Positions 4,845 through 30,425 of a stretch of 41,458 nucleotides of DNA are shown piece after piece; positions within the stretch are counted from its first letter, which is position 1; each line of letters opens with the position of its first letter. The notes under the pieces were generated by a model. The model was given only the letters and a program-made list of their open reading frames with translations. It made no database searches and was not told the DNA's origin. The translations under genes were made by a program, and so were the position numbers. The DNA comes from Polymyxa betae A26-41 (taxonomy: Eukaryota > Protista > Endomyxa: Phytomyxea), in the NCBI GenBank assembly GCA_003693705.1, contig RBZT01000488.1:1-41458 (forward strand), written 5' to 3'.

Positions 4845-5629
4845 CTATTGGTTCAGGTTTGCATCGATTGGGGTCGTTGAGGAGCTCGGACAGGGCTCGG
4901 ATTGTTTACAGATTGGGCACACAGGTGACCGCTGCCTGCTGGCCCATTGTTGGGCGCAGCTTTGATGTAACAAATGGCGACGGCAGGGCATCATACAGAT
5001 CTTAAAAGTAGAATCAGAACTGAGAAAAAACCGAACAAATTTGAAGCAAATTTAAGAAACTCTGCGGGATAGAGAGATGACAGAAACGAAATAAAAGCTC
5101 TGACATTTGGGGTGGTCTCGGACATTGTTTCCATACAAATGACGCAATCCTCATTAAGCTGTTCTTGATACTATGTAAGCACAGTTAGTATGAGGATACG
5201 ACAATAAGGAAAGAGGACTTTCAGACGAGCCGAATTGGAGAGAGTTGGTAACGAGATTTCAGTGGGCGTCGAGAGTTCAGGAACAGCTGTTGGTAACACG
5301 TGAGAACCAAGGACCTGGGGTTTAGGGTTAGGGTTTCGGAGATGCCATCCTCTGTGGGTTTCACATTTCGCGCTCTCTCATAGACACAGCGACAGCAATA
5401 AAAGAGGAGGAGGTATATTGCAGGCACAAGCAGGAAAAGACCCAGAAACTTCACAGCAGATACGGATGAGGGCGTGGCCTCAGGCGGCGCGACCTCCAGC
5501 AACAGTCGCCCTCTACACAGATTTCGCTCAGTTCCAGGCACGATCGAAGTTTCGGATACGTTACCGGGCCGAGTCGGGCCAGGACGACGTCCGCAGAGAC
5601 AGGACGGCGACGACGAAGGCGATATTCAT
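4845..5629 (-). CDS. Signal peptide + TM + RING-H2 protein (putative membrane E3 ubiquitin ligase), 5 exons
   Basis: Exons 5629-5565, 5512-5365, 5314-5219, 5170-5105 and 5000-4845 splice in frame with GT-AG introns. Product: MNIAFVVAVLSL... FLGLFLLVPAIYLLLFYCC (TM) ... EDCVICMETMSETTPN|ICMMPCRRHLLHQSCAQQW..SPVCPICK (C3H2C3 RING). Confidence 0.82.
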
Positions 5630-6195
5630 GTTCGGAGCAATGTCCGGACATGGACAATTCCGACCGCATTCGAATGCGAAACGCAGCCGTACCGGCTCGC
5701 AGAGTGGGAGCGACGGTTCGAACTGCGCACGGAATTTGCGAATGTTCTATAATACAGGCCATGATCGTCTCACGCCCGGATTTGAAAATGTCATGCCCTC
5801 AGGTAGAGTCACGTCATTCTTGTAGCTGGTTTTCGCAAATTTCCGTTCTACAGACCAAAAATTGTTCCAATATTCAGACAATCAGGAAACAGAAATTTCG
5901 GAATTTTCGAAAACATTTCGAGCTTGTTCACAAAAAGGTTTGCTGAAGCGATCCTCTTGACAAACCATTCAGACAGGCTCTAAGACATGGACCACCATCA
6001 GAATCATTAGGGTTTTAGGGTTTCAATTCAGCCAGCTCCTCCTCATTGACAGTTACCCGATCGTCAGCAGAATTCGGGTCGTACTGGCCCTCAATTGTCC
6101 CCACTGGGTGGAAGGCGTACATGCCCACAATATCTGAGATCACGTTCGGGTACCCTTCCTCTATCCACGTGTTCGATTTCGGTTGCCATCTGATC

Positions 6196-9100
6196 ATGGA
6201 GTTGCGCAGTTCGACGGCGCCGCCGTCGGAGCCGGCGACGCCGCGCTGGCCCATGCCGAGTGGATCCGCGACGACGGCCACGACGGCGACCAGTTCCGTG
6301 AGTCAGAGTACGCAACGGGATTCGACCGGGAAGGGATCCAGCGGACAGACCACGAACATTAAGGTCTGAGGCACTGCCGCAACGTTTCCTGTAACGAGTT
6401 CCCAACTCACGGGTTTATGTTACCACTTCATATCGCGGGATTTTCGGGATGGAATCTTCGATTTCTGCTGTGATGGAAACTTGCGAAATGCGGACATCAC
6501 TCTTGACGTTACCAGTTTACGTTTTCTTTCGTTACATGTCCAGAGAGACATTCTCTGACTCATGATGTGTTACAGCGAAAACAGACGGATCGGCTGTCGC
6601 GGGTCAAGAGGACCACACTGCTTGTGGTGATACTGGCCGATCTAACGTTACTCGGGGCGTTAACGTATCAGATGCTGTGGCTGCATTCATCGTTACTGGA
6701 AGCCCTGCAGGATCGCATCACGGACTCGATGGGATTCTATCACTACGTCTACAATCAGCAGTTCACAGAAATGGTCCCGTTCGCTTGTAACGTAATCTGG
6801 CATTACAGTCAACGGAATCTGTATAGGCGCTGTCCGCCACGCTGTATAGCTCGAGCGCGAACCAGGCCGTCGCCTGTTCGGCACTATCCGGAGACGCCGC
6901 CGCGCAGTCCGAAATGCAGCGGAGGCTCGGCAGTGATGTGCGTGGCCGCGGCATCGAAATCGCTCTGGTCACGGACACCGCCGGGGTGATTATGAGCACC
7001 GGAGGGCCGAAGTCCGCACTCGGAGCGAGATTCAATCCGCATGGTACCATTACGGACTTCGCCCAGAAGTACCCTCAGACAACGCAGCAGGTCGGTGGTG
7101 GTTAACGTTACAGGTAACGTGATGGGTTGAGCTGCGAGTGCAGCTGAAGTGTTCGGTGATGATGGAGCGCGATCTGTTCGAGACTCTGGGTGCGCCGGTG
7201 TATGCGAAGTCCGAGGACGGACCGGTTTTGTCCTGGCGCAACTATACGGAAACGTTAACCCGTCTGGTGGTTACGCCGCTATACTGTGGTCAGACACAGA
7301 ATCAGGGTTATCTAATCCTCGGTAATCATTCCCAATTTCTTTGCATCGGATATTATTCCATTTTTGTTTCTAACAAAGAAAAACCGCGAGTCCCATTTTC
7401 CAGCAATTTATTCAAAAAAAAAATCAAATTGCTCAGAAAAGTTTCGATTTTTCATATCCAGCAGAATTGATTTCCTTTCACCTGATTTGCCACCAAAAGC
7501 ACGAAACGTGCCTGTGCCAACTACTGACAAAGCTGCATTTGTAACATTAGGACACGCCCTGACTCCGAGTCCGTTCGAGCCTATCAATCGTCTGGTGCAG
7601 GCCACCGAGTCGGCGTTCGTGGCGGTCCTGGCTCGCACTTCGCAAGGCCGATGGCAGACCCAGTACGCGTTCAACCACAACAGCGACACGGGGCAGCACG
7701 GCTGGCGCGGCCCGCTCTCGGATCCGCTGCTCTATTTTGACGGCGACTTTCTCCGAGAGGTCACAGCGCAGCGCACCCCTCGAAGTGGACGCCAATCGAT
7801 TGGTAACGTAAACCGTGTGTCTTACGTTACTGGCTTACGTTACCCTAAGGTACATTCAAATACTCGTACGCGGCGCTGCCGATTGCCCGGACCCAGCTCG
7901 GGTCGGAAGTGATTGACGGGATTATGGGCGCGGACGCCGTGGTCGTTCACGCCGAGCCTGAGTATGCTGTTGCACGAACTGTGAATACCCTTCTTCTCTG
8001 GCATGTCCCGTTCGGCGTCTTTCTCATCCTTTTGAGCTTCGTTACACTGAAATTCACATGTAACGTTGCGTCAGACAGTATAAAGTTTCCTATCTGATAC
8101 CCAGTTTCTTATAGATGTGAAGTTTATCGACCCGATGAGGCTGCTCATCGATTCGGTCAAGAAACGACAGTAACGTTAACACTTTAGGATTGTAACGCTA
8201 TCCGACTGAGCCCCACTAGGATGAAGGAGTTCAGCGATCGGATCCGTCGTCTGAAATCGAGCCGCAGCTCGATGAACTCGCTACTGCTCAAGGCCGTACT
8301 GGTCCAAGGCGTCCTGCTTGGCCTCGTCTTCGCAAATCGTCACCTACTAACGTCGTCGATCGCGGATTTCACGTCGGCCACTGTCCAGGTCCGTCTCACA
8401 TGCAACGTTACTGTCACCGGAGCTTAAACTTACACTGCCGCAGGGTCGTATTGGCCCATACGTTTGCTCGACCGGCGCCCGCCTGATCATCTCGTATCTG
8501 AACGCCTGGGCCGGGTTCGACTCGATGCTCACCAATGCTGTTACACGTAACGTAACCGATTCGTTCCGCGCTGATCTCCAGACGGGATTCCAACCGATGA
8601 AGGCTGATGTCATCTACCTGATAGCTCCGTAAGCATTATGATGGAGATTCTTTGCCCAGAGCGTTTATCTCGATTGAAAAAGATCACACAGTTCGTTCTC
8701 CGGATATTTTGGTTTTCTAATGAGAGACTCCCATTTTTGTTGCGCTTAATCTTGGAGGATAATTTTCAACTTTCACTGGGACTGTAACAAGGCATAACAC
8801 GGTCTTTGATAAGACGCTTTTTTTCACGCATTTTTTGCAATATTGAGCCTTTTTTTCTGGGAACTGAAACAAACCACAACAGGGTCTTTCTTTCATATGA
8901 CGCTGTTTTTTTTTACAGATTTTTGCAATAATGAGCGATTGTTTTTCGTTTTCTGGGAACTCTGATATAGTCGTCGATCTGATCTCTCATGAAGAGATTC
9001 GACCGTTATCGCCAGCAGCTACCGACCCGCCGAAGGGCGTGTATTCCCCGAGGTCGGCATCATGTCGTATCTGCGAAAGCAGGCGCCCGCGGATCGGCGC

Positions 9101-10382
9101 ACCTTCACGACGCTGACGAACTGGCCCTTGGACGACGTGGCGGCGCTGATGCCGCGCGCCGCGAACTTTTCTGACGCTCCGGCTCTGATACGGCTGGCTG
9201 TGGCTCCGATCAGTTACGTTTCGTTGAATGGTAACTGTCCTTTTGACTGAAGGAACCCGGCCGATAAATGTTGCAGCAACAGATGGTTCCGTGGAGACGG
9301 GCGACCTGGTCGGGGCTCTGGTCGTCCTGCGCGTGTTTAACGGCCTCCATCTGATCTACGATTGGATGGTGGATGCGTTCGGCACCGGATATTATGGTAC
9401 AAGCGATTCCGCTTAGCGCTCCGATTAATATGTAACGTAATCTGCCTGAGCAGGGATTTATGAGTGGGATCGGTTCCAGCAGGAGTTCGCTGCAGTCACC
9501 ACGATACTCAGAGTACGACATTCATTTGTTTCGGATGTGAATGCAGTTTTTGGACATTGAAAACTATTAAGGATTTCACCCTAAAAACCCTATTAAGGAT
9601 TTCAACCTTTTCTCATAGGCCGCTCTCATTGGTTTTCGTGAAGTTTTCATCATCAAATGTCAACAAGTTTTTCTAATCTGTTTGGAAGTTTGCTCAATAG
9701 CAACTTTAACAGCTTTATTATTTCTGTTCGAAATTTCCAAAAATTTCTCAGCATTATATCAATGCCACTAGACACTTTCCTTTCAAAAATGAATTCAGTG
9801 GTTGTCTAAAATGTGACCATACAGACCGACACCGCCTCGGACTACGAGACCGATGTCCAGGACATGTATCCGGACCTGCTTTACAATGCCGACGCCGTCT
9901 TCACATCGTACGCCCACGACGCCGACGCCGGGATCCTCATTCGCCAAGGGGTCCGCATCGCCGGCCAGTCCACAACGGTGTCCGTGACGCCCTATTTCAC
10001 AGCCGACGACGTCGTACTGTCTCCGCTGATGTTCAACGCGTACCAAGTTACCGCCGTCCCGCAACAGCGCTACGACGACCTACTGGCCCATCAGCTCGCC
10101 GTGCAGATCGCGATCATGGCCGTGGAGTGGGCGGCCTCCATCGTGGCCTTGCTGTGTACGTACTGGCCCATGAAACGGTTTCTGGACCAGCTGGAAAAGG
10201 CGTTCAATGTGCCGTCGATGTCGGAAGCGAAACGGGCGAAGATGGAGGAGATGGCGGCGGCCATGGTGACACGTCCCGATCCAAGAACGAAGCCTGAGAC
10301 GATGAAGCCGGACGGGACGCCTCACGCCACGCACCAGCTGTCGCTTCCCGGCTTCATTACTAATCGACAGATAAAACAATAA
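6196..10382 (+). CDS. 883-aa four-TM membrane protein with two tandem Cache-like extracytoplasmic sensor modules and no catalytic output domain; 13 exons
   Basis: Exons 6196-6363, 6576-6773, 6827-7090, 7144-7321, 7551-7802, 7850-8059, 8115-8169, 8220-8388, 8444-8628, 8995-9230, 9277-9396, 9454-9512 and 9825-10382 total 2652 nt, with consistent phases and no stop. Intron positions are shared with the paralogue at 27911-30425. Each module reads TM - (IALVTDTAGVIMST / VIYLIAPDSTVIAS) - (LTRLVVTPL..GYLILG / LIRLAVAPI..VGALVV) - TM - P(M)xxL. Confidence 0.85.
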
Positions 10383-12570
10383 TGATACAGCGTTACCCCG
10401 CTGTTTAGTGACACGTAATTGTCTGTCAACTTCTGTCTGGGATGTCACATAGCTTTGAAACCCTAAACCCTAGACACCTTTACTAGTTGGAAGAAAAGTC
10501 CCAGAAACTGTGTCTCGATTGGCTTTGTCGTTTATGAGCATTTTATTCCCTTTGTCCAGGAGCAACTTTGCTATATTGTGTGCTCGAATTTGATATCAAA
10601 TCCAGAAACGTCTGCGGAAGGAACCGAAGCGAAAGGAGCTCGATAGTTCGATAGTCTCATTCAGCCAACGATTACCTCCTTTTTCTCCAAGACTACAGAA
10701 CCCGACTCGTTTTCTCTGCATCGACCATCCGGTATCATATCAGCATCCTCCAAAGAGAAGACGATTCCGCCTCAACAAAACTTCCTATTTCCGCAATCAT
10801 GGGAGGAAATGGATCGGATTTACCTTAGCTATAACTATGAAGGACATGGCAAAGGAGCCCTTGAACGAAATTATCGTTAGAAAACTGTCTTCAACACTTG
10901 CATGCTGGGGTGAGTGAATCATGTAAAGCCTAGAACCATGGGAATTCAGATCGCCTCAATGCATATAGAGCAATTTAAGAACCAATTGAAAAAATTTCTA
11001 TAAGATTGTTACTAAAACATATTGGGTTCACTTTATTTGCTATCTCTCGAAATATTGACATCCTCTCAAACTTCCACAGATGTCAGAAACTTTGACAACT
11101 TTGTCACTATTAGTATGAAAAAAAAAATTGTCTGGCCGAATTTGTCGCCAAAGTTAGGATGTCGCAGTCCTAAAGTGTCACAAAACCTCGAGGTAACTCT
11201 GTAGATAGACGGGATGGGCTTGAGAGAGAGAGCTAACAGTGAGATGCGCGACCCCCTTCGGCTCGGTAATTGCTAGCTGATTCGAGGAACCATCCTGACT
11301 GTGCGGTCAGCTCGACCGCCGAGCGGTGTCCAGTCGCGTACGAGTGTTATGAATCGCTGAGGAAGCCCTCGTACGCCATAGAAGCTTCCATGTAGCTATA
11401 CAACGATGGGACAGTTGCATTGCTTCGTTCGTTTATTATCACCGTTTCTTACCACTTTTCATTCATGATTGTCAATAGTATGACTGTACCGTTTTTCATC
11501 ACGTTTAGATCGGGATAAGGCTTTTGATTCAGAGGCTTCATTCGCTGTCGTGCCCATCGACATCAAGTGACTCATCGCATAACATATTCTCCTTCTATCA
11601 CCATTTACTCTTCTCTTTTCACTTCTATCACCATTCACCCTTCTTTAATTTTTTCTTACAAACATTTTATGCATTCTCAATCGCATATTTTACAGGTGTA
11701 TCACACTGGTCCATCATTAAAAATCTGCTACCTTAAAGACAGGATAATATCTGCCCAGCCATCATCGGTCGGTTGAAGACTCTTCCATTACCAGATATGA
11801 ACGAAGTCGACTTTGACAATGACGTTGAGAGCCTATTGACATGAGATGCGTCAACCCTTTATCTGATTGCTGAATCATGTCACAATGTATGAGCTCGGCC
11901 ACCATACATTGTACTTGTGAAATGACGCAAGTAGTCAGGTTCTGGATTGCTTTAAGCGGTCTCACACTCTCTAGATTCAATCCACCTTGCTTGTAACATC
12001 ATCAAAGAGCCCATTTCGGCATAGTCAGGAAATTGGATAATCGAAAGCGGTGTATTATGGAAAAAGATTAACGGATGGATTGGGCTTTTCTTGTTTGATG
12101 ATTTGGTCAATAGGCGGCGCTGTGTCAAGGAAAAACAGGCGAAACAGCAATCAGCAACGCATTCATAACGGATTAGTTCATGATTGCTTGGATCGGACTG
12201 TAGTTGATGGAATTTAGGAATCACATCGGAAGACGTCAATCTCAAACTTGGCACGTTTTTTCTGCCATGGACAAAGCGCTGAGAACACATTTACTTGCCC
12301 AAATTCTGGACAATATTGTTTTAACATTCCTAATCTGTTCATGTGCCATAATCATGACGCAGCACGACCAGGCGAGGCGCCATAGCGATGAAGAGATAAA
12401 CCCCAATTTTCCAAATTTTACGAGGTAGTGAGCGGTTCGGAAGCGATCCTGAGAAAAAAATTCCGCCAAAACATATGAATTTATATCCCTATTGTTTTGC
12501 TGCAACGCGAATTTGTTGTTGCCATTCTGCAATCGCTTATCCATCCTTTCCTATCACCCGTTACTGGGCC

Positions 12571-27910: not shown

Positions 27911-30425
27911 CTATGAAACGAAATCGTGCGCTGATTCGTCCGGCTTCGTCAGCGCCTCCGCATTATGGACCCTGTCCGGCGCCGTCGGCATCATCAGCGC
28001 CACGGCACGCTCCTCCATCTTCCGCCGCTTGTCCCCGGACATCGACGGAATTCGGAACGCCTTCTCCAGATCGTCCAGGAACTGTTTCATGGGCCAGTAC
28101 GAACAGACCAGGGCCACGGTCGACGCATCGCCATGATGACGCTCTGCAGGACGGTTTGCCGCGCGCCTCCATCGTGTCGTACTGCTCCTGGCTGACGGCC
28201 GTGAGACCAGGTACCCGTTGACCATCAGCGGGGGCAGTACGGCGTTCTCGCCGGTGAAGTACGACGAGATCGAGAGCGTGTTGGACTGGCAGCGAATCTG
28301 GACGCCGGTCTGGACCAGCCTGCCGTTCGTCTCGTACGACCTCTTGATGGAGTTCTCGAAGATGGGGGCGTTCGCTTGGGAGATGTCGACGTTGTATTCC
28401 AGCGTGGTTGCAGTCTGCATCACCAAGTCAGAGGAAACCCTAAAACCCTCAACCAGCAGCCTTTTCGTTTGCATTTTGAATTTGAGAAGACAATGGGAAA
28501 CAGACATCGAATAACCAACAATGAACGTTGGAACAATTCAGGCGATAAACGTTTAAGTGGAAATTTCAAGAACATTTCCAAAAAAAATTCTTGTTTGAGA
28601 ACAGACAAAGTGATGAAATTTCTACAGGGAAACGCGTTGATATGAATAAAAAGAGACTCTTTCTGAGGTTGAAGATTAGTTAAAATGATAAAGAAAAAAT
28701 TAGAGTGAAAAAATTCTAGACGAAAATTCAATTTTTTTGAAAAATATGAATTCCAGATACCTTCCAGACAGAAGTAAGAGCAGCGAACCTCCCACGATAT
28801 CTGTCCCATTCGTATAAGCCTGTTTACGACTTGTTAGGGTTTAGGGTTTCTGATACCAGCAACCTCTCTCACCTCCATATCCAGTTCCGAACGCATTCAC
28901 GATATCACCCCAGACCGACGTCTTCCCGTTAAAGATTCGGATACAGATCAGAGCTCCCACCAGCTCATCTGTTACCGTAACGTTAGAAGCGTCATCTATC
29001 TGTAACGCACGTTACCATTCGAGGTCACAGGCGCGGCCTCCATACGAAGAAACGCGGGCGGGTTCGTACTCGCGAACGTCGACGGCGTGAAGGTATTGAC
29101 AACGGCGGGCTGTCAGTACGTTAATGTGATGAAGGGACGCCACTCCGATTCGGTCTGATTCTGATAGTATTTCATGACGCCCAGATTCGGGAATGTTTGC
29201 CCCTCCGACGATGGGTGAGTGCTGGCCACCACAATCGAATTGTTAAAAGTACATTCTCTGAAAAGATATTTCATGAAATATTTTCAAAAATATATCACCC
29301 CGATGTGATTAGTTTCAAACGAAATAAAAAAAATGGATCTTCAAAACAAAAATGACAAGAAAAGTGAAGGAGACACTGGGAACGCCGTAACAGAGTGCGC
29401 AGGAAGCCAGGCCGGACCTGTTCTGACGTCTGCGGAAACTGCTGGTGAAAGTCCGTGATGATCGAGTTCGGGTTGAACTCATGGCCGTGCGCCGTACTGG
29501 ACCCGGCTGTACTGACGATGGTGCCGGTAACGTCGGTAACAAGAGCAATTCCAATGTTGCGGAGTTGGATGTCGTTTGCGAGATGCTGCTGCATGTCGGA
29601 CAGCGCGGCGTCATCTCCGGAGAGGGCACCGCAGGCGGTCATCGCGGATGTGTTGAAAGAATGAATGCTGGCTCCGAGAGCCTGCAACGTGTCACGTTAC
29701 CGAGTGGAGTTGGTATGGCAGGTAACGTACAAGGCTGTCGAAAATCTCGCTGTAACTGAATCGATAGAATCCCATTAGGTTGGTGATACGATCCTCAAAA
29801 GCGGAATGAAGGCTCTGATCGAGCCAGATCATCTGATATGTGAGCGCCCCTAATAGTATCAGATCTGCTATGATCACCACCAGTAATGTGCGCTTCTTTA
29901 CAAACGCCAGCTTATCGTTTTGCGAGTGCTGCAACAGAGCACATCGTCAAAACTCATAGAAACGCCGCCTGTCGGAAAGCATGCAATTTCCGCACTTTTG
30001 AAAGAAAAAGAAAACGCTGACTGGTAGCTCAAACTTGCGTCAGCCATTGTAACTTTTACAGTTGGTGAAAAGATGGATAAATTATTGCGTATGTTGCAGA
30101 TATCAGCTGACAACAAGTTGCGTAGTCAACAATTGACTTCAAAGCAAAAAACTTAAAAACAGCGTAATCAAAAACTGCGTTATCGAACATGTTTGCAATG
30201 GCCACAGAGGCAAATTTATGAACTCTCAATACGGAGACTTGTTGAAATGTGACGCACTTTCTTCTCGGTGGTTTCGCCATCCGACGATGGCTTCCCGGTT
30301 GACGATTTCTTGGACTCCGGCGATGTGCTGCTCGAGACGTGGCTGGAAGTGGCAGCCGGCACGATGGCGATCGACCCGGCGTACCGCGGCATTTGCGTGG
30401 ACATCTGCTCCGAAGCGAGCTCCAT
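27911..30425 (-). pseudogene. Decaying paralogue of the 6196-10382 Cache-like receptor gene
   Basis: Exons 1-3 (30425-30258, 29928-29731, 29681-29418) match the paralogue in length (56, 66 and 88 codons) and sequence. Equivalents of exons 4-9 are absent. In-frame TGA at 29115-29113 aligns with Trp (TLTNW vs TLTY*). Small indels in the last exon (~28120-28210) scramble TM4. Confidence 0.85.

What the first reader, a model, noticed from the sequence alone, without database searches (positions are those of the whole stretch)
6196..10382. Eukaryotic intron-rich receptor built from two chemoreceptor-like sensor modules, with no signalling domain
Seen: topology TM-sensor-TM-linker-TM-sensor-TM-short tail, an internal duplication. 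Each second TM is followed by a HAMP-start-like PMxxL (FIDPMRLL, YWPMKRFL), but no kinase, cyclase or MCP domain follows. From memory, not from a search: the motifs RGIEIALVT..G..FNP..QQLKCS..LTRLVVTPL and ALIRLAVAPI..LVGALVV...NG...AFGTGY resemble periplasmic Cache-type domains of cyanobacterial methyl-accepting chemotaxis proteins (R.IEYATLV..FNP..QIKAS..ALIRY.VTPV..IGALV.GD..NG..GGYSAVY). Inference: a bacterially derived sensor domesticated in a eukaryote (12 introns, gene duplication). The tandem fusion could mimic the bacterial receptor dimer in one chain and signal through a partner or the Ser/Thr-rich N-tail. This is the best candidate for an undescribed sensory system here.
Basis: partly seen in the sequence, partly recalled or inferred. 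Interest (0 to 1): 0.8.

Follow-up and report, generated by a model that had tools for sequence, protein, structure and literature searches.

The report
Tandem Cache-type receptor without output domain
This is an expressed gene of the sugar-beet root parasite Polymyxa betae for a four-pass membrane protein that carries two bacterial-style (Cache/PDC) ligand-sensor modules in one chain and no enzyme domain. The family is found only in the plasmodiophorid plant parasites and has not been studied.

Summary
Spliced transcript contigs from three studies confirm 13 exons, 12 GT..AG introns and an 883-aa product that stops at 10382 with no onward splicing. Hydropathy and charge give the topology TM, ~310-aa outside domain, TM, 40-aa basic loop, TM, ~310-aa outside domain, TM, 74-aa tail.

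The Cache reading is supported by structure, not by sequence. The membrane-distal part of module 1 was folded from a paralogue's single exon (pLDDT 89). It matches the DctB and CitA sensor domains (Z 12.2 and 11.5) and cyanobacterial chemoreceptor sensors (TM 0.77). No Pfam Cache, CHASE or HAMP model matches.

The two modules align collinearly by profile comparison (E 1e-5; controls 0.08 to 0.6). The two halves of the Plasmodiophora homologue are predicted to pack like a bacterial sensor dimer (0.71 against 0.01 for controls).

The genome is the Polymyxa betae draft. It holds at least six further copies, two of them broken. An exhaustive search found relatives only in Plasmodiophora, Spongospora and a few environmental contigs.

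A bacterial origin, the ligand and the output route are not shown. The scan also noted a paralogue elsewhere in this genome (s1-690283). I rate it a new variant of a known kind, of moderate to high interest.

The parts
6196..6363 (+). Exon 1: start codon and Ser/Thr-rich cytoplasmic N-tail (residues 1-56)
   Evidence: Joint 6363/6576 in the contigs of three runs; 41% Ser/Thr; residues 32-56 are 72% identical in paralogue C204
6576..6773 (+). Exon 2: basic juxtamembrane helix (RKQTDRLSRVKR), TM1 (residues 69-87, window 6612-6668) and the start of the stalk helix of module 1
   Evidence: In the profile alignment it pairs with the KEFSDRIRRLK-TM3 segment
6827..7321 (+). Exons 3-4 (6827-7090, 7144-7321; intron 7091-7143): membrane-distal Cache/PDC domain of module 1 (residues about 123-270), with the conserved pair Cys139/Cys258
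   Evidence: The equivalent single exon of paralogue C45 folds at pLDDT 89.1. Best matches are DctB Z 12.2, CitA Z 11.5 and cyanobacterial MCP sensors TM 0.77. Alignment A2
7551..8059 (+). Exons 5-6 (7551-7802, 7850-8059): second, membrane-proximal alpha/beta part of module 1 and TM2 (residues 400-420, about window 7987-8049)
   Evidence: Paralogue alignment. Its fold was not modelled here; it is inferred from size, strand pattern and protein-language-model hits to double-Cache clusters
8115..8388 (+). Exons 7-8 (8115-8169, 8220-8388): conserved basic cytoplasmic loop (FIDPMRLLIDSVKK at 8123-8164, then MKEFSDRIRRLKSSRS), TM3 (residues 462-480, window 8278-8334) and the start of the stalk of module 2
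   Evidence: The loop is the most conserved segment of the family, with mean pairwise identity 0.46 against 0.25-0.32 for the outside domains. The motif is kept in P0011 and P0016
8444..9512 (+). Exons 9-12 (8444-8628, 8995-9230, 9277-9396, 9454-9512): stalk and membrane-distal domain of module 2 (residues about 499-698)
   Evidence: Joints. It aligns collinearly with the distal domain of module 1. Protein-language-model features of P0011:400-745 lie nearest dCache_1/PDC clusters at 0.97. It was not folded on its own
9825..10382 (+). Exon 13: last three strands of the proximal part of module 2, TM4 (residues 791-809, window 10101-10157), the conserved tail YWPMKRFLDQLEKAFNVPSMS (10161-10223), a second short helix and the stop codon
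   Evidence: AF2 model at pLDDT 73.6 has one unbroken helix from the outside domain through TM4 into the PM motif, then a loop and a helix. In 18 sequences Pro813 is invariant and Phe817, Ser829 and Ser831 nearly so. Transcript contigs end at about 10398
27926..29934 (-). Broken copy of the same family in the same window. It lacks the equivalents of residues 213-560, has an in-frame stop, and has at least two frameshifts across the TM4 region
   Evidence: tblastn and three-frame reading

Best explanation
The locus encodes an expressed 883-aa, four-pass membrane protein of Polymyxa betae. It is built from two homologous units. Each unit is a short basic cytoplasmic helix, a TM helix, a ~310-aa extracytoplasmic sensor of the Cache/PDC (PhoQ-DcuS-CitA) fold class, a second TM helix, and a conserved 'P-M-x-x-L/F-L/I-x-x-V/L-K/E-K' helix that continues the TM helix into the cytoplasm.

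The two units most likely pack side by side through their TM helices and long stalk helices. One chain would then reproduce the homodimer of bacterial Cache sensors, but with two non-identical ligand pockets.

There is no kinase, cyclase, MCP or HAMP domain. The most likely working (inferred) is as follows:
1. A small molecule outside the cell binds in a distal pocket.
2. Binding shifts the C-terminal helix and its TM helix, as in bacterial Cache receptors.
3. This changes the short, highly conserved cytoplasmic loop and tail, including the invariant Pro and two near-invariant Ser residues.
4. A separate partner protein reads that change.

Shown: the gene model, its expression, the topology pattern, the PDC fold of one domain, the relatedness of the two units, and the family's restriction to plasmodiophorids. 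Inferred: the double-PDC build of each module, the pseudo-dimer, ligand binding, and any signalling.
For: Gene model and expression: 12 identical GT..AG joints in contigs of three studies, and an 883-codon frame.

Topology: four hydrophobic segments, the positive-inside pattern, and sequons in the large domains.

Fold of the module 1 distal domain:
- AF2 gives pLDDT 89.1 and pTM 0.83, with helix-helix-strand-strand-helix-strand-helix-strand-strand order.
- Foldseek against the PDB gives DctB at E 1.8e-4 and TM 0.60, plus WalK, CitA, PhoQ, DcuS and KinD.
- VIA-align gives DctB Z 12.2 (2.5 A, 112 aligned), CitA 11.5, and the double-Cache sensors 3lif and McpH at 10.3. In the two-domain sensor structures among these matches the aligned residues fall in the first part of the chain, which I take to be the membrane-distal domain.
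- The ESM Atlas shape search gives TM 0.77 (127 aa, 1.9 A) to cyanobacterial MCP and histidine-kinase sensors with Cache_3 families.

Both halves of P0011 have dCache_1/dCache_3/PDC clusters as nearest neighbours by protein-language-model features (0.96-0.97).

Unit 1 against unit 2 by profile comparison: 336 collinear columns, E 1.1e-5; controls 0.08 to 0.6.

Pseudo-dimer: ipSAE 0.71 against a best control of 0.01. That mark was reached by 51 of 78 solved complexes and 2 of 108 mismatched pairs. Partner pLDDT is at least 71 and the runs agree in at least 81% of contacts. The interface is TM1 plus stalk and C-helix plus TM2 against TM3 plus stalk and C-helix plus TM4.

The cytoplasmic loop and tail are the best-conserved parts.

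No catalytic domain: no Pfam hit on any exon or on P0011 or P0016, and the transcripts end about 16 nt after the stop.
Against: - No Cache, CHASE or HAMP profile matches any member. The best is sCache_3_2 at E 0.11 in P0016.
- Profile searches of PDB sequences find nothing.
- Only one of the four presumed PDC domains was modelled with confidence, and it came from a paralogue about 34% identical, not from the window gene itself.
- The last-exon model gave no significant fold match.
- The unit-to-unit profile signal leans on the TM and juxtamembrane parts. With the outside domains alone it is weak and not collinear.
- The complex score may reflect the model's memory of solved sensor dimers. The two halves are in any case tethered.
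- No ligand, partner, localisation or phenotype is known.
Confidence: 0.65

Rival explanations
1. It is a CHASE-domain receptor in the sense of the plant cytokinin receptors, as the NCBI name of the Plasmodiophora homologue says, and it lets the parasite sense host cytokinin.
For: P0011 is named 'CHASE domain-containing protein' by NCBI. The CHASE domain of AHK4 is also a double PAS-like outside sensor, and it appears among the fold matches at Z 7.5. Cytokinin matters in clubroot disease (PMC12559101).
Against: Pfam CHASE (PF03924) finds nothing in P0011 or P0016, nor in the whole genome read in six frames. AHK4 ranks well below DctB, CitA and the double-Cache sensors (Z 7.5 against 10-12). 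The nearest predicted structures carry Cache_3 families. The NCBI name is automatic. The survey of eukaryotic histidine kinases lists 16 in P. brassicae and reports no CHASE kinase among them (PMC6324907).
Confidence: 0.08
2. It has a Cache fold but is not a signalling receptor. It could be an auxiliary or trafficking subunit of a channel or transporter, as the animal alpha2-delta proteins are, or a surface adhesion or recognition protein of zoospores.
For: There is no output domain. The known eukaryotic dCache_1 proteins are channel subunits rather than enzymes (PMC8915833). The outside domains diverge fast among paralogues.
Against: The short cytoplasmic loop and tail are the best-conserved parts, with an invariant Pro and near-invariant Ser residues. 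That pattern fits a conserved intracellular contact better than a purely outside role. There is no VWA domain, which that paper reports in every eukaryotic dCache_1 protein it found.
Confidence: 0.2
3. The two halves are not a duplication. Two unrelated outside domains were joined, and the likeness is limited to TM helices and composition.
For: Pairwise comparison is at chance (z 0.3). The comparison of outside domains alone is weak and not collinear.
Against: The full-unit profile alignment is collinear over 336 columns and lies far above the reversed and shuffled controls. Both halves give the same protein-language-model neighbours. The predicted interface uses equivalent elements of both halves. 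The motifs K-x-x-x-D-x-L/I-x-x-V/L-K before TM1 and TM3, and P-M-x-x-L/F after TM2 and TM4, recur at equivalent places.
Confidence: 0.05

Closest known systems
Bacterial double-PDC / double-Cache sensor domains (DctB; dCache_3 and dCache_1 families, such as rpHK1S-Z16, McpH, PscC and Tlp3)
   Same: An outside domain sits between two TM helices. A long N-terminal stalk helix is followed by a PAS-like alpha/beta domain, then a second alpha/beta part, then a C-terminal helix running into the membrane. Fold matches are Z 10-12. The predicted packing through stalk and TM helices resembles their homodimers.
   Different: No family profile matches. Two modules are fused in one chain by a 40-aa cytoplasmic hairpin. 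There is no HAMP, kinase, MCP or cyclase output. The gene is eukaryotic and has 12 introns.
Cyanobacterial methyl-accepting chemotaxis proteins and histidine kinases with sCache_3_3 / Cache_3-Cache_2 sensors
   Same: They are the nearest predicted structures to the modelled domain (TM 0.77, 127 aa, 1.9 A).
   Different: Those proteins carry HAMP plus MCPsignal or HisKA/HATPase_c domains. No significant sequence similarity to them was found.
Eukaryotic dCache_1 proteins (calcium-channel alpha2-delta, CACHD1)
   Same: They are eukaryotic proteins with two Cache-type double domains and no enzymatic output.
   Different: There the two dCache_1 domains are nested and one carries a VWA insertion, reported for every eukaryotic dCache_1 protein that paper found (PMC8915833). 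Here the modules are tandem, each with its own TM pair. There is no VWA domain, the amino-acid motif is absent, and Pfam dCache_1 does not match.
CHASE-domain receptors (plant AHK4, Dictyostelium DhkA)
   Same: They have a double PAS-like outside sensor between TM helices in a eukaryote, and the Plasmodiophora homologue is named after CHASE.
   Different: The CHASE profile does not match. The structural match is weaker (Z 7.5). There is no histidine kinase.

Membership tests
Cache superfamily (extracytoplasmic PDC/PAS-like sensors, Pfam clan CL0165) | Domain lies outside the membrane, flanked by TM helices | tested here: met
   Hydropathy, charge distribution and sequons. This is a prediction only; nothing was tested at the bench.
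Cache superfamily (extracytoplasmic PDC/PAS-like sensors, Pfam clan CL0165) | PAS-like fold with N-terminal helices and a five-stranded antiparallel sheet, resembling solved PDC sensors | tested here: met
   Met for the distal domain of module 1, taken from paralogue C45: pLDDT 89.1; DctB Z 12.2, CitA Z 11.5; Atlas TM 0.77. The other three presumed domains were not modelled well.
Cache superfamily (extracytoplasmic PDC/PAS-like sensors, Pfam clan CL0165) | Significant match to a Cache family profile (dCache_1, dCache_3, sCache_3 and others) | tested here: not met
   No hit at E up to 10 for the exons or for P0011. sCache_3_2 scores E 0.11 in P0016. dCache_1 in the whole genome read in six frames gives only E 0.44, and at another locus.
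Double Cache (two PDC modules per sensor) | Distal and proximal PAS-like modules on one long stalk helix | tested here: inconclusive
   Each outside domain is about 310 aa. The modelled domain aligns to the first part of the chain in two-domain sensor structures, which I take to be their distal module. About 130 further outside residues with a strand pattern follow it. Protein-language-model neighbours are double-Cache clusters. The last-exon model shows only three strands plus the helix.
dCache_1AA (amino-acid-binding subclass) | AA_motif Y-x4-R-x-W ... Y ... D in the distal module (PMC8915833) | tested here: not met
   No Y-x4-R-x-W or R-x-W-Y/F string in the window protein, its paralogues, P0011 or P0016.
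CHASE (PF03924) | Match to the CHASE profile | tested here: not met
   Searches gave no match. The AHK4 fold match is only Z 7.5. The PROSITE CHASE profile, which may be behind the NCBI name, could not be run.
HAMP (PF00672) | About 50 aa of AS1, connector and AS2 after the last TM helix, leading to an output domain; match to the profile | tested here: not met
   No Pfam HAMP hit in P0011 or P0016 at E up to 10. After TM2 there are only 40 aa before TM3. After TM4 there is a helix, a 6-residue loop (VPSMS) and a short helix. Only the P-M-x-x-L start resembles AS1, and that comparison is from memory.
Chemoreceptor, sensor kinase or cyclase | Cytoplasmic MCPsignal, HisKA/HATPase_c, GGDEF or cyclase domain | tested here: not met
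   No such Pfam hit. The tail is 74 aa. The transcript ends about 16 nt after the stop.
alpha2-delta / CACHD1 type | VWA domain inserted in a dCache_1 domain, and nested dCache_1 domains | tested here: not met
   No VWA hit. The modules are tandem, each between its own TM helices.

The most novel reading that the evidence does not exclude
Plasmodiophorid parasites have their own class of chemoreceptor. It is a single-chain pseudo-dimer of two different Cache sensors. It reads root or soil chemicals, for example to guide zoospore swimming, encystment or intracellular development. It signals through a short, conserved cytoplasmic module with no HAMP domain and an as yet unknown partner. The family has expanded in Polymyxa, with at least six intact copies, against one detected in Plasmodiophora.
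Probability: 0.3. Interest if true: 0.75.

Novelty: new variant of a known kind. Interest (0 to 1): 0.6.

Why it matters
Polymyxa betae transmits the rhizomania virus of sugar beet. Its relatives cause clubroot (Plasmodiophora) and powdery scab (Spongospora). Within the searches made here I found no description of a receptor by which these obligate parasites perceive host or soil signals.

This family is a concrete, expressed candidate. Its modules could be produced separately and screened for ligands.

It is also a eukaryotic Cache-fold protein outside the only well-described eukaryotic type, the VWA-bearing alpha2-delta/CACHD1 proteins (PMC8915833). Because no profile detects it, surveys based on Pfam would miss it.

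The one-chain pseudo-dimer is a natural test of how an asymmetric Cache 'dimer' passes a signal across the membrane without a HAMP or kinase domain.

Tried and rejected
**Searches that found nothing useful**
- Pfam on ten exons and on P0011 and P0016 gave no meaningful hit.
- PDB sequence searches with P0011 and with profile A2 found nothing.
- Pfam dCache_1 and CHASE over the whole genome in six frames found nothing relevant.

**Alignments for folding a whole protein**
- I tried to give AlphaFold a full-length alignment made of exon fragments. MAFFT stretched and misplaced the fragments in every variant tried, including with sub-ranges of P0011 as bridges.
- Only two sub-regions were therefore folded.

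**Fold searches with the last-exon model**
- Foldseek gave no significant match. KinD, PAS and CHASE4 appeared only at E 0.5-0.9.
- VIA-align was dominated by the long helix.

**Reads and early leads**
- Raw-read run X22 gave no reads, so it is no test.
- An early idea that the genome is an alveolate, prompted by a neighbouring note on a CDPK7-like gene, was dropped. P0011 turned out to be from Plasmodiophora, and the assembly size matched Polymyxa betae.

**The shortened copy in the window**
- I considered it as a natural single-module form. I rejected this because it has a stop and frameshifts, and its junction would duplicate strand 2 and a helix.

**Left out by rule**
- The joined 883-aa product was never handed to a search, fold or database tool. 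Those tools received exons by reference only.
- The joined model, and rough joined models of the paralogues, were used only inside local scripts, for hydropathy, MAFFT and hhalign.
Full report
**What is there**

The stretch 6196-10382 on the + strand is a real, expressed, intron-rich gene. Contigs of three public runs from three studies (X3, X5, X10) lie on it with the same 12 skipped parts, all with GT..AG ends.

The 13 exons are 6196-6363, 6576-6773, 6827-7090, 7144-7321, 7551-7802, 7850-8059, 8115-8169, 8220-8388, 8444-8628, 8995-9230, 9277-9396, 9454-9512 and 9825-10382. Joined, they give one frame of 883 codons.

The contigs begin about 20 nt before the ATG and end about 16 nt after the stop. 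There are no loose ends and no further joints. The product therefore does not continue into a catalytic domain.

By rule, the joined product was never sent to a search or folding tool. Those tools received exons by reference. The joined model was used only in local scripts.

**Topology**

Hydropathy gives four TM-like segments: 69-87, 400-420, 462-480 and 791-809. Three segments are basic: 57-68 (net +5), 422-461 (+7) and the tail 810-883 (+4). The two 310-aa domains are acidic (-4 and -13) and hold four N-x-S/T sites.

The N-tail (1-56) is 41% Ser/Thr.

**Which organism**

The window's assembly has 27,085,814 bases in 1,001 contigs. The Polymyxa betae draft genome is described as 1,001 contigs, 27,085,946 bp and 45.1% GC (PMC6328671).

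The only protein found with the module 1 profile is a 'Beta vulgaris' hypothetical protein on a 766-bp contig. It is most simply parasite DNA in the sugar-beet assembly.

**Family and distribution**

The genome holds further copies on contigs C204 (the closest, about 50% identical), C935, C45, C968 and C566 (cut by the contig end). There are also two broken ones:
- C31 has a last exon only, with an in-frame TGA.
- Window 27926-29934 (-) lacks the equivalents of residues 213-560, has a stop, and has at least two frameshifts.

A profile of the last exon was scored against every one of 1.84 billion representative proteins. It found 14 proteins. One is a full-length Plasmodiophora brassicae protein (P0011, 797 aa), which NCBI names 'CHASE domain-containing protein'. 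Others are 'uncharacterized' proteins of Spongospora subterranea, including the near full-length P0016 (714 aa). The rest are unnamed fragments from ENA, Logan and JGI assemblies.

No bacterial protein appeared in this search or in the word-based searches. I found no paper on this family.

**Fold**

No sequence profile recognises the modules. Pfam finds nothing for the exons or for P0011. P0016 gets only sCache_3_2 at E 0.11. PDB sequence searches are empty.

Structure prediction does recognise them. The region equivalent to residues 134-274 is a single exon in paralogue C45. With a 12-row alignment (A2) it folds at pLDDT 89.1 and pTM 0.83, into two helices followed by strand-strand-helix-strand-helix-strand-strand.

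Its matches are as follows:
- Foldseek: DctB (E 1.8e-4, TM 0.60), WalK, CitA, PhoQ, DcuS and KinD.
- VIA-align: DctB Z 12.2 (2.5 A over 112 residues), CitA 11.5, the double-Cache sensors 3lif and McpH 10.3, KinD 9.8, PscC 8.5 and Tlp3 8.1. In the two-domain sensor structures among these, the aligned residues fall in the first part of the chain, which I take to be the membrane-distal domain. The CHASE domain of AHK4 scores only 7.5.
- ESM Atlas shape search: the nearest predicted structures are sensors of cyanobacterial chemoreceptors and histidine kinases carrying Cache_3 families (TM 0.77, 127 residues, 1.9 A).

Both halves of P0011 have dCache_1, dCache_3 and PDC clusters as nearest neighbours by protein-language-model features (0.96-0.97).

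The last exon of the window gene folds at pLDDT 73.6. It forms three strands and one unbroken helix that runs from the outside domain through TM4 into the PMKRFLDQLEKAFN segment, then the VPSMS loop and a second helix. This partial domain gave no significant fold match.

**Are the two modules related, and do they pair?**

Pairwise comparison is at chance, and a first profile comparison was weak. With P0016 added, unit 1 and unit 2 align over 336 collinear columns. The score is 49.3, with E 1.1e-5 in local mode and 3.6e-9 in global mode. The reversed profile scores 21.7 and six block-shuffled profiles score 14-21.

The alignment pairs these elements:
- the basic helix before TM1 with the one before TM3;
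- IEIALVTDTAGVIMSTGG..G..FNP with VIYLIAPDSTVIASSY..G..FPE;
- LTRLVVTPL with LIRLAVAPI;
- the last strand, TM2 and PMRLLIDSVKK with the last strand, TM4 and PMKRFLDQLEK.

With the outside domains alone the signal is weak and not collinear. The duplication is therefore well supported for the unit as a whole, and less so for the sensor cores taken alone.

The two halves of P0011, given as separate chains, are predicted to bind. The ipSAE is 0.71 against a best control of 0.01. That mark was reached by 51 of 78 solved complexes and by 2 of 108 mismatched pairs. Partner pLDDT is at least 71, and the runs agree in at least 81% of contacts.

The interface is TM1 plus stalk helix and C-terminal helix plus TM2, against the equivalent four elements of the second half. 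That is the layout of bacterial PDC-sensor homodimers as I recall it. The score may partly come from the model's memory of those dimers. It shows the likeness, not the binding.

**What it probably does**

The best-conserved parts are not the sensors (mean pairwise identity 0.25-0.32). They are the cytoplasmic loop (0.46) and the tail (0.43). In 18 sequences Pro813 is invariant, and Phe817, Ser829 and Ser831 are nearly so.

Variable outside domains combined with a constant inside face is the pattern of a receptor family that uses a common intracellular partner.

The most likely reading is a ligand-binding, single-chain pseudo-dimeric Cache receptor. Its output would be a conformational change of the short loop and tail, read by another protein, perhaps with phosphorylation of the conserved serines. 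All of this paragraph's conclusion is inference.

The amino-acid motif of dCache_1AA sensors is absent (motif from PMC8915833), so the ligand cannot be guessed.

**Comparison with known kinds**

It works like a bacterial double-Cache sensor, but it fails the profile test for every Cache family, for CHASE and for HAMP. It differs from the known eukaryotic dCache_1 proteins (alpha2-delta, CACHD1), which are nested and carry a VWA insertion.

The NCBI name 'CHASE domain-containing' is not borne out by the Pfam profile or by the ranking of structural matches. The PROSITE profile could not be run.

The claim of a bacterial origin cannot be tested, because no bacterial relative is visible by sequence.

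**Verdict**

This is a new variant of a known kind: Cache/PDC sensors in a tandem, four-TM eukaryotic architecture with no output domain, restricted to plasmodiophorids and without a functional study that I could find. A first-stage note on another piece of this genome (s1-690283) describes what is evidently a paralogue.

Noticed in passing
window 27926-29934 (-): A second copy of the family lies in the same window and is a pseudogene. The equivalents of residues 213-560 are missing. It has an in-frame stop in the exon at 29023-29241 and at least two frameshifts across the TM4 region.
   Followed up: yes
L016 (G000:C31:13500-21500), match at 5544-6029: Only the last exon of a family member is detectable here, and it carries an in-frame TGA. 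It is probably a gene remnant.
   Followed up: partly
P0015: A 145-aa 'hypothetical protein BVRB_030670, partial [Beta vulgaris subsp. vulgaris]' on a 766-bp contig matches the module 1 profile at E 2e-14. It is most simply Polymyxa DNA in the sugar-beet assembly.
   Followed up: no
window 7803-7849, 8060-8114, 8170-8219 (introns 5-7): These short introns begin GTAACGT, and some carry ACGTTAC again near their 3' end, so that the intron ends could pair. Similar GTAACG/CGTTAC strings occur in other introns of the gene. Another first-stage note (s1-674184) covers this.
   Followed up: no
window 6010-6023 and 10458-10473: Telomere-type heptamer repeats flank the gene: GGGTTTTAGGGTTT about 170 nt before the start, and AAACCCTAAACCCTAG about 75 nt after the stop. 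They may be promoter or terminator elements, or simply dispersed repeats.
   Followed up: no
L022 (JGI metagenome 3300060284, 5.7-kb contig), 1-1980: This is an environmental, intron-containing distant homologue (P0012/P0017) with 43% GC. It has the end of one module with a TM helix, followed by a second module. The first half of that second module resembles module 1 of the window protein, and its second half resembles module 2. A Glyco_hydro_125 gene lies next to it. The source organism is unknown.
   Followed up: partly
P0011 (NCBI XXQ35093.1): The public name 'CHASE domain-containing protein' of the Plasmodiophora homologue is not reproduced by Pfam CHASE. The structural matches favour DctB, CitA and Cache_3-type sensors.
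   Followed up: partly
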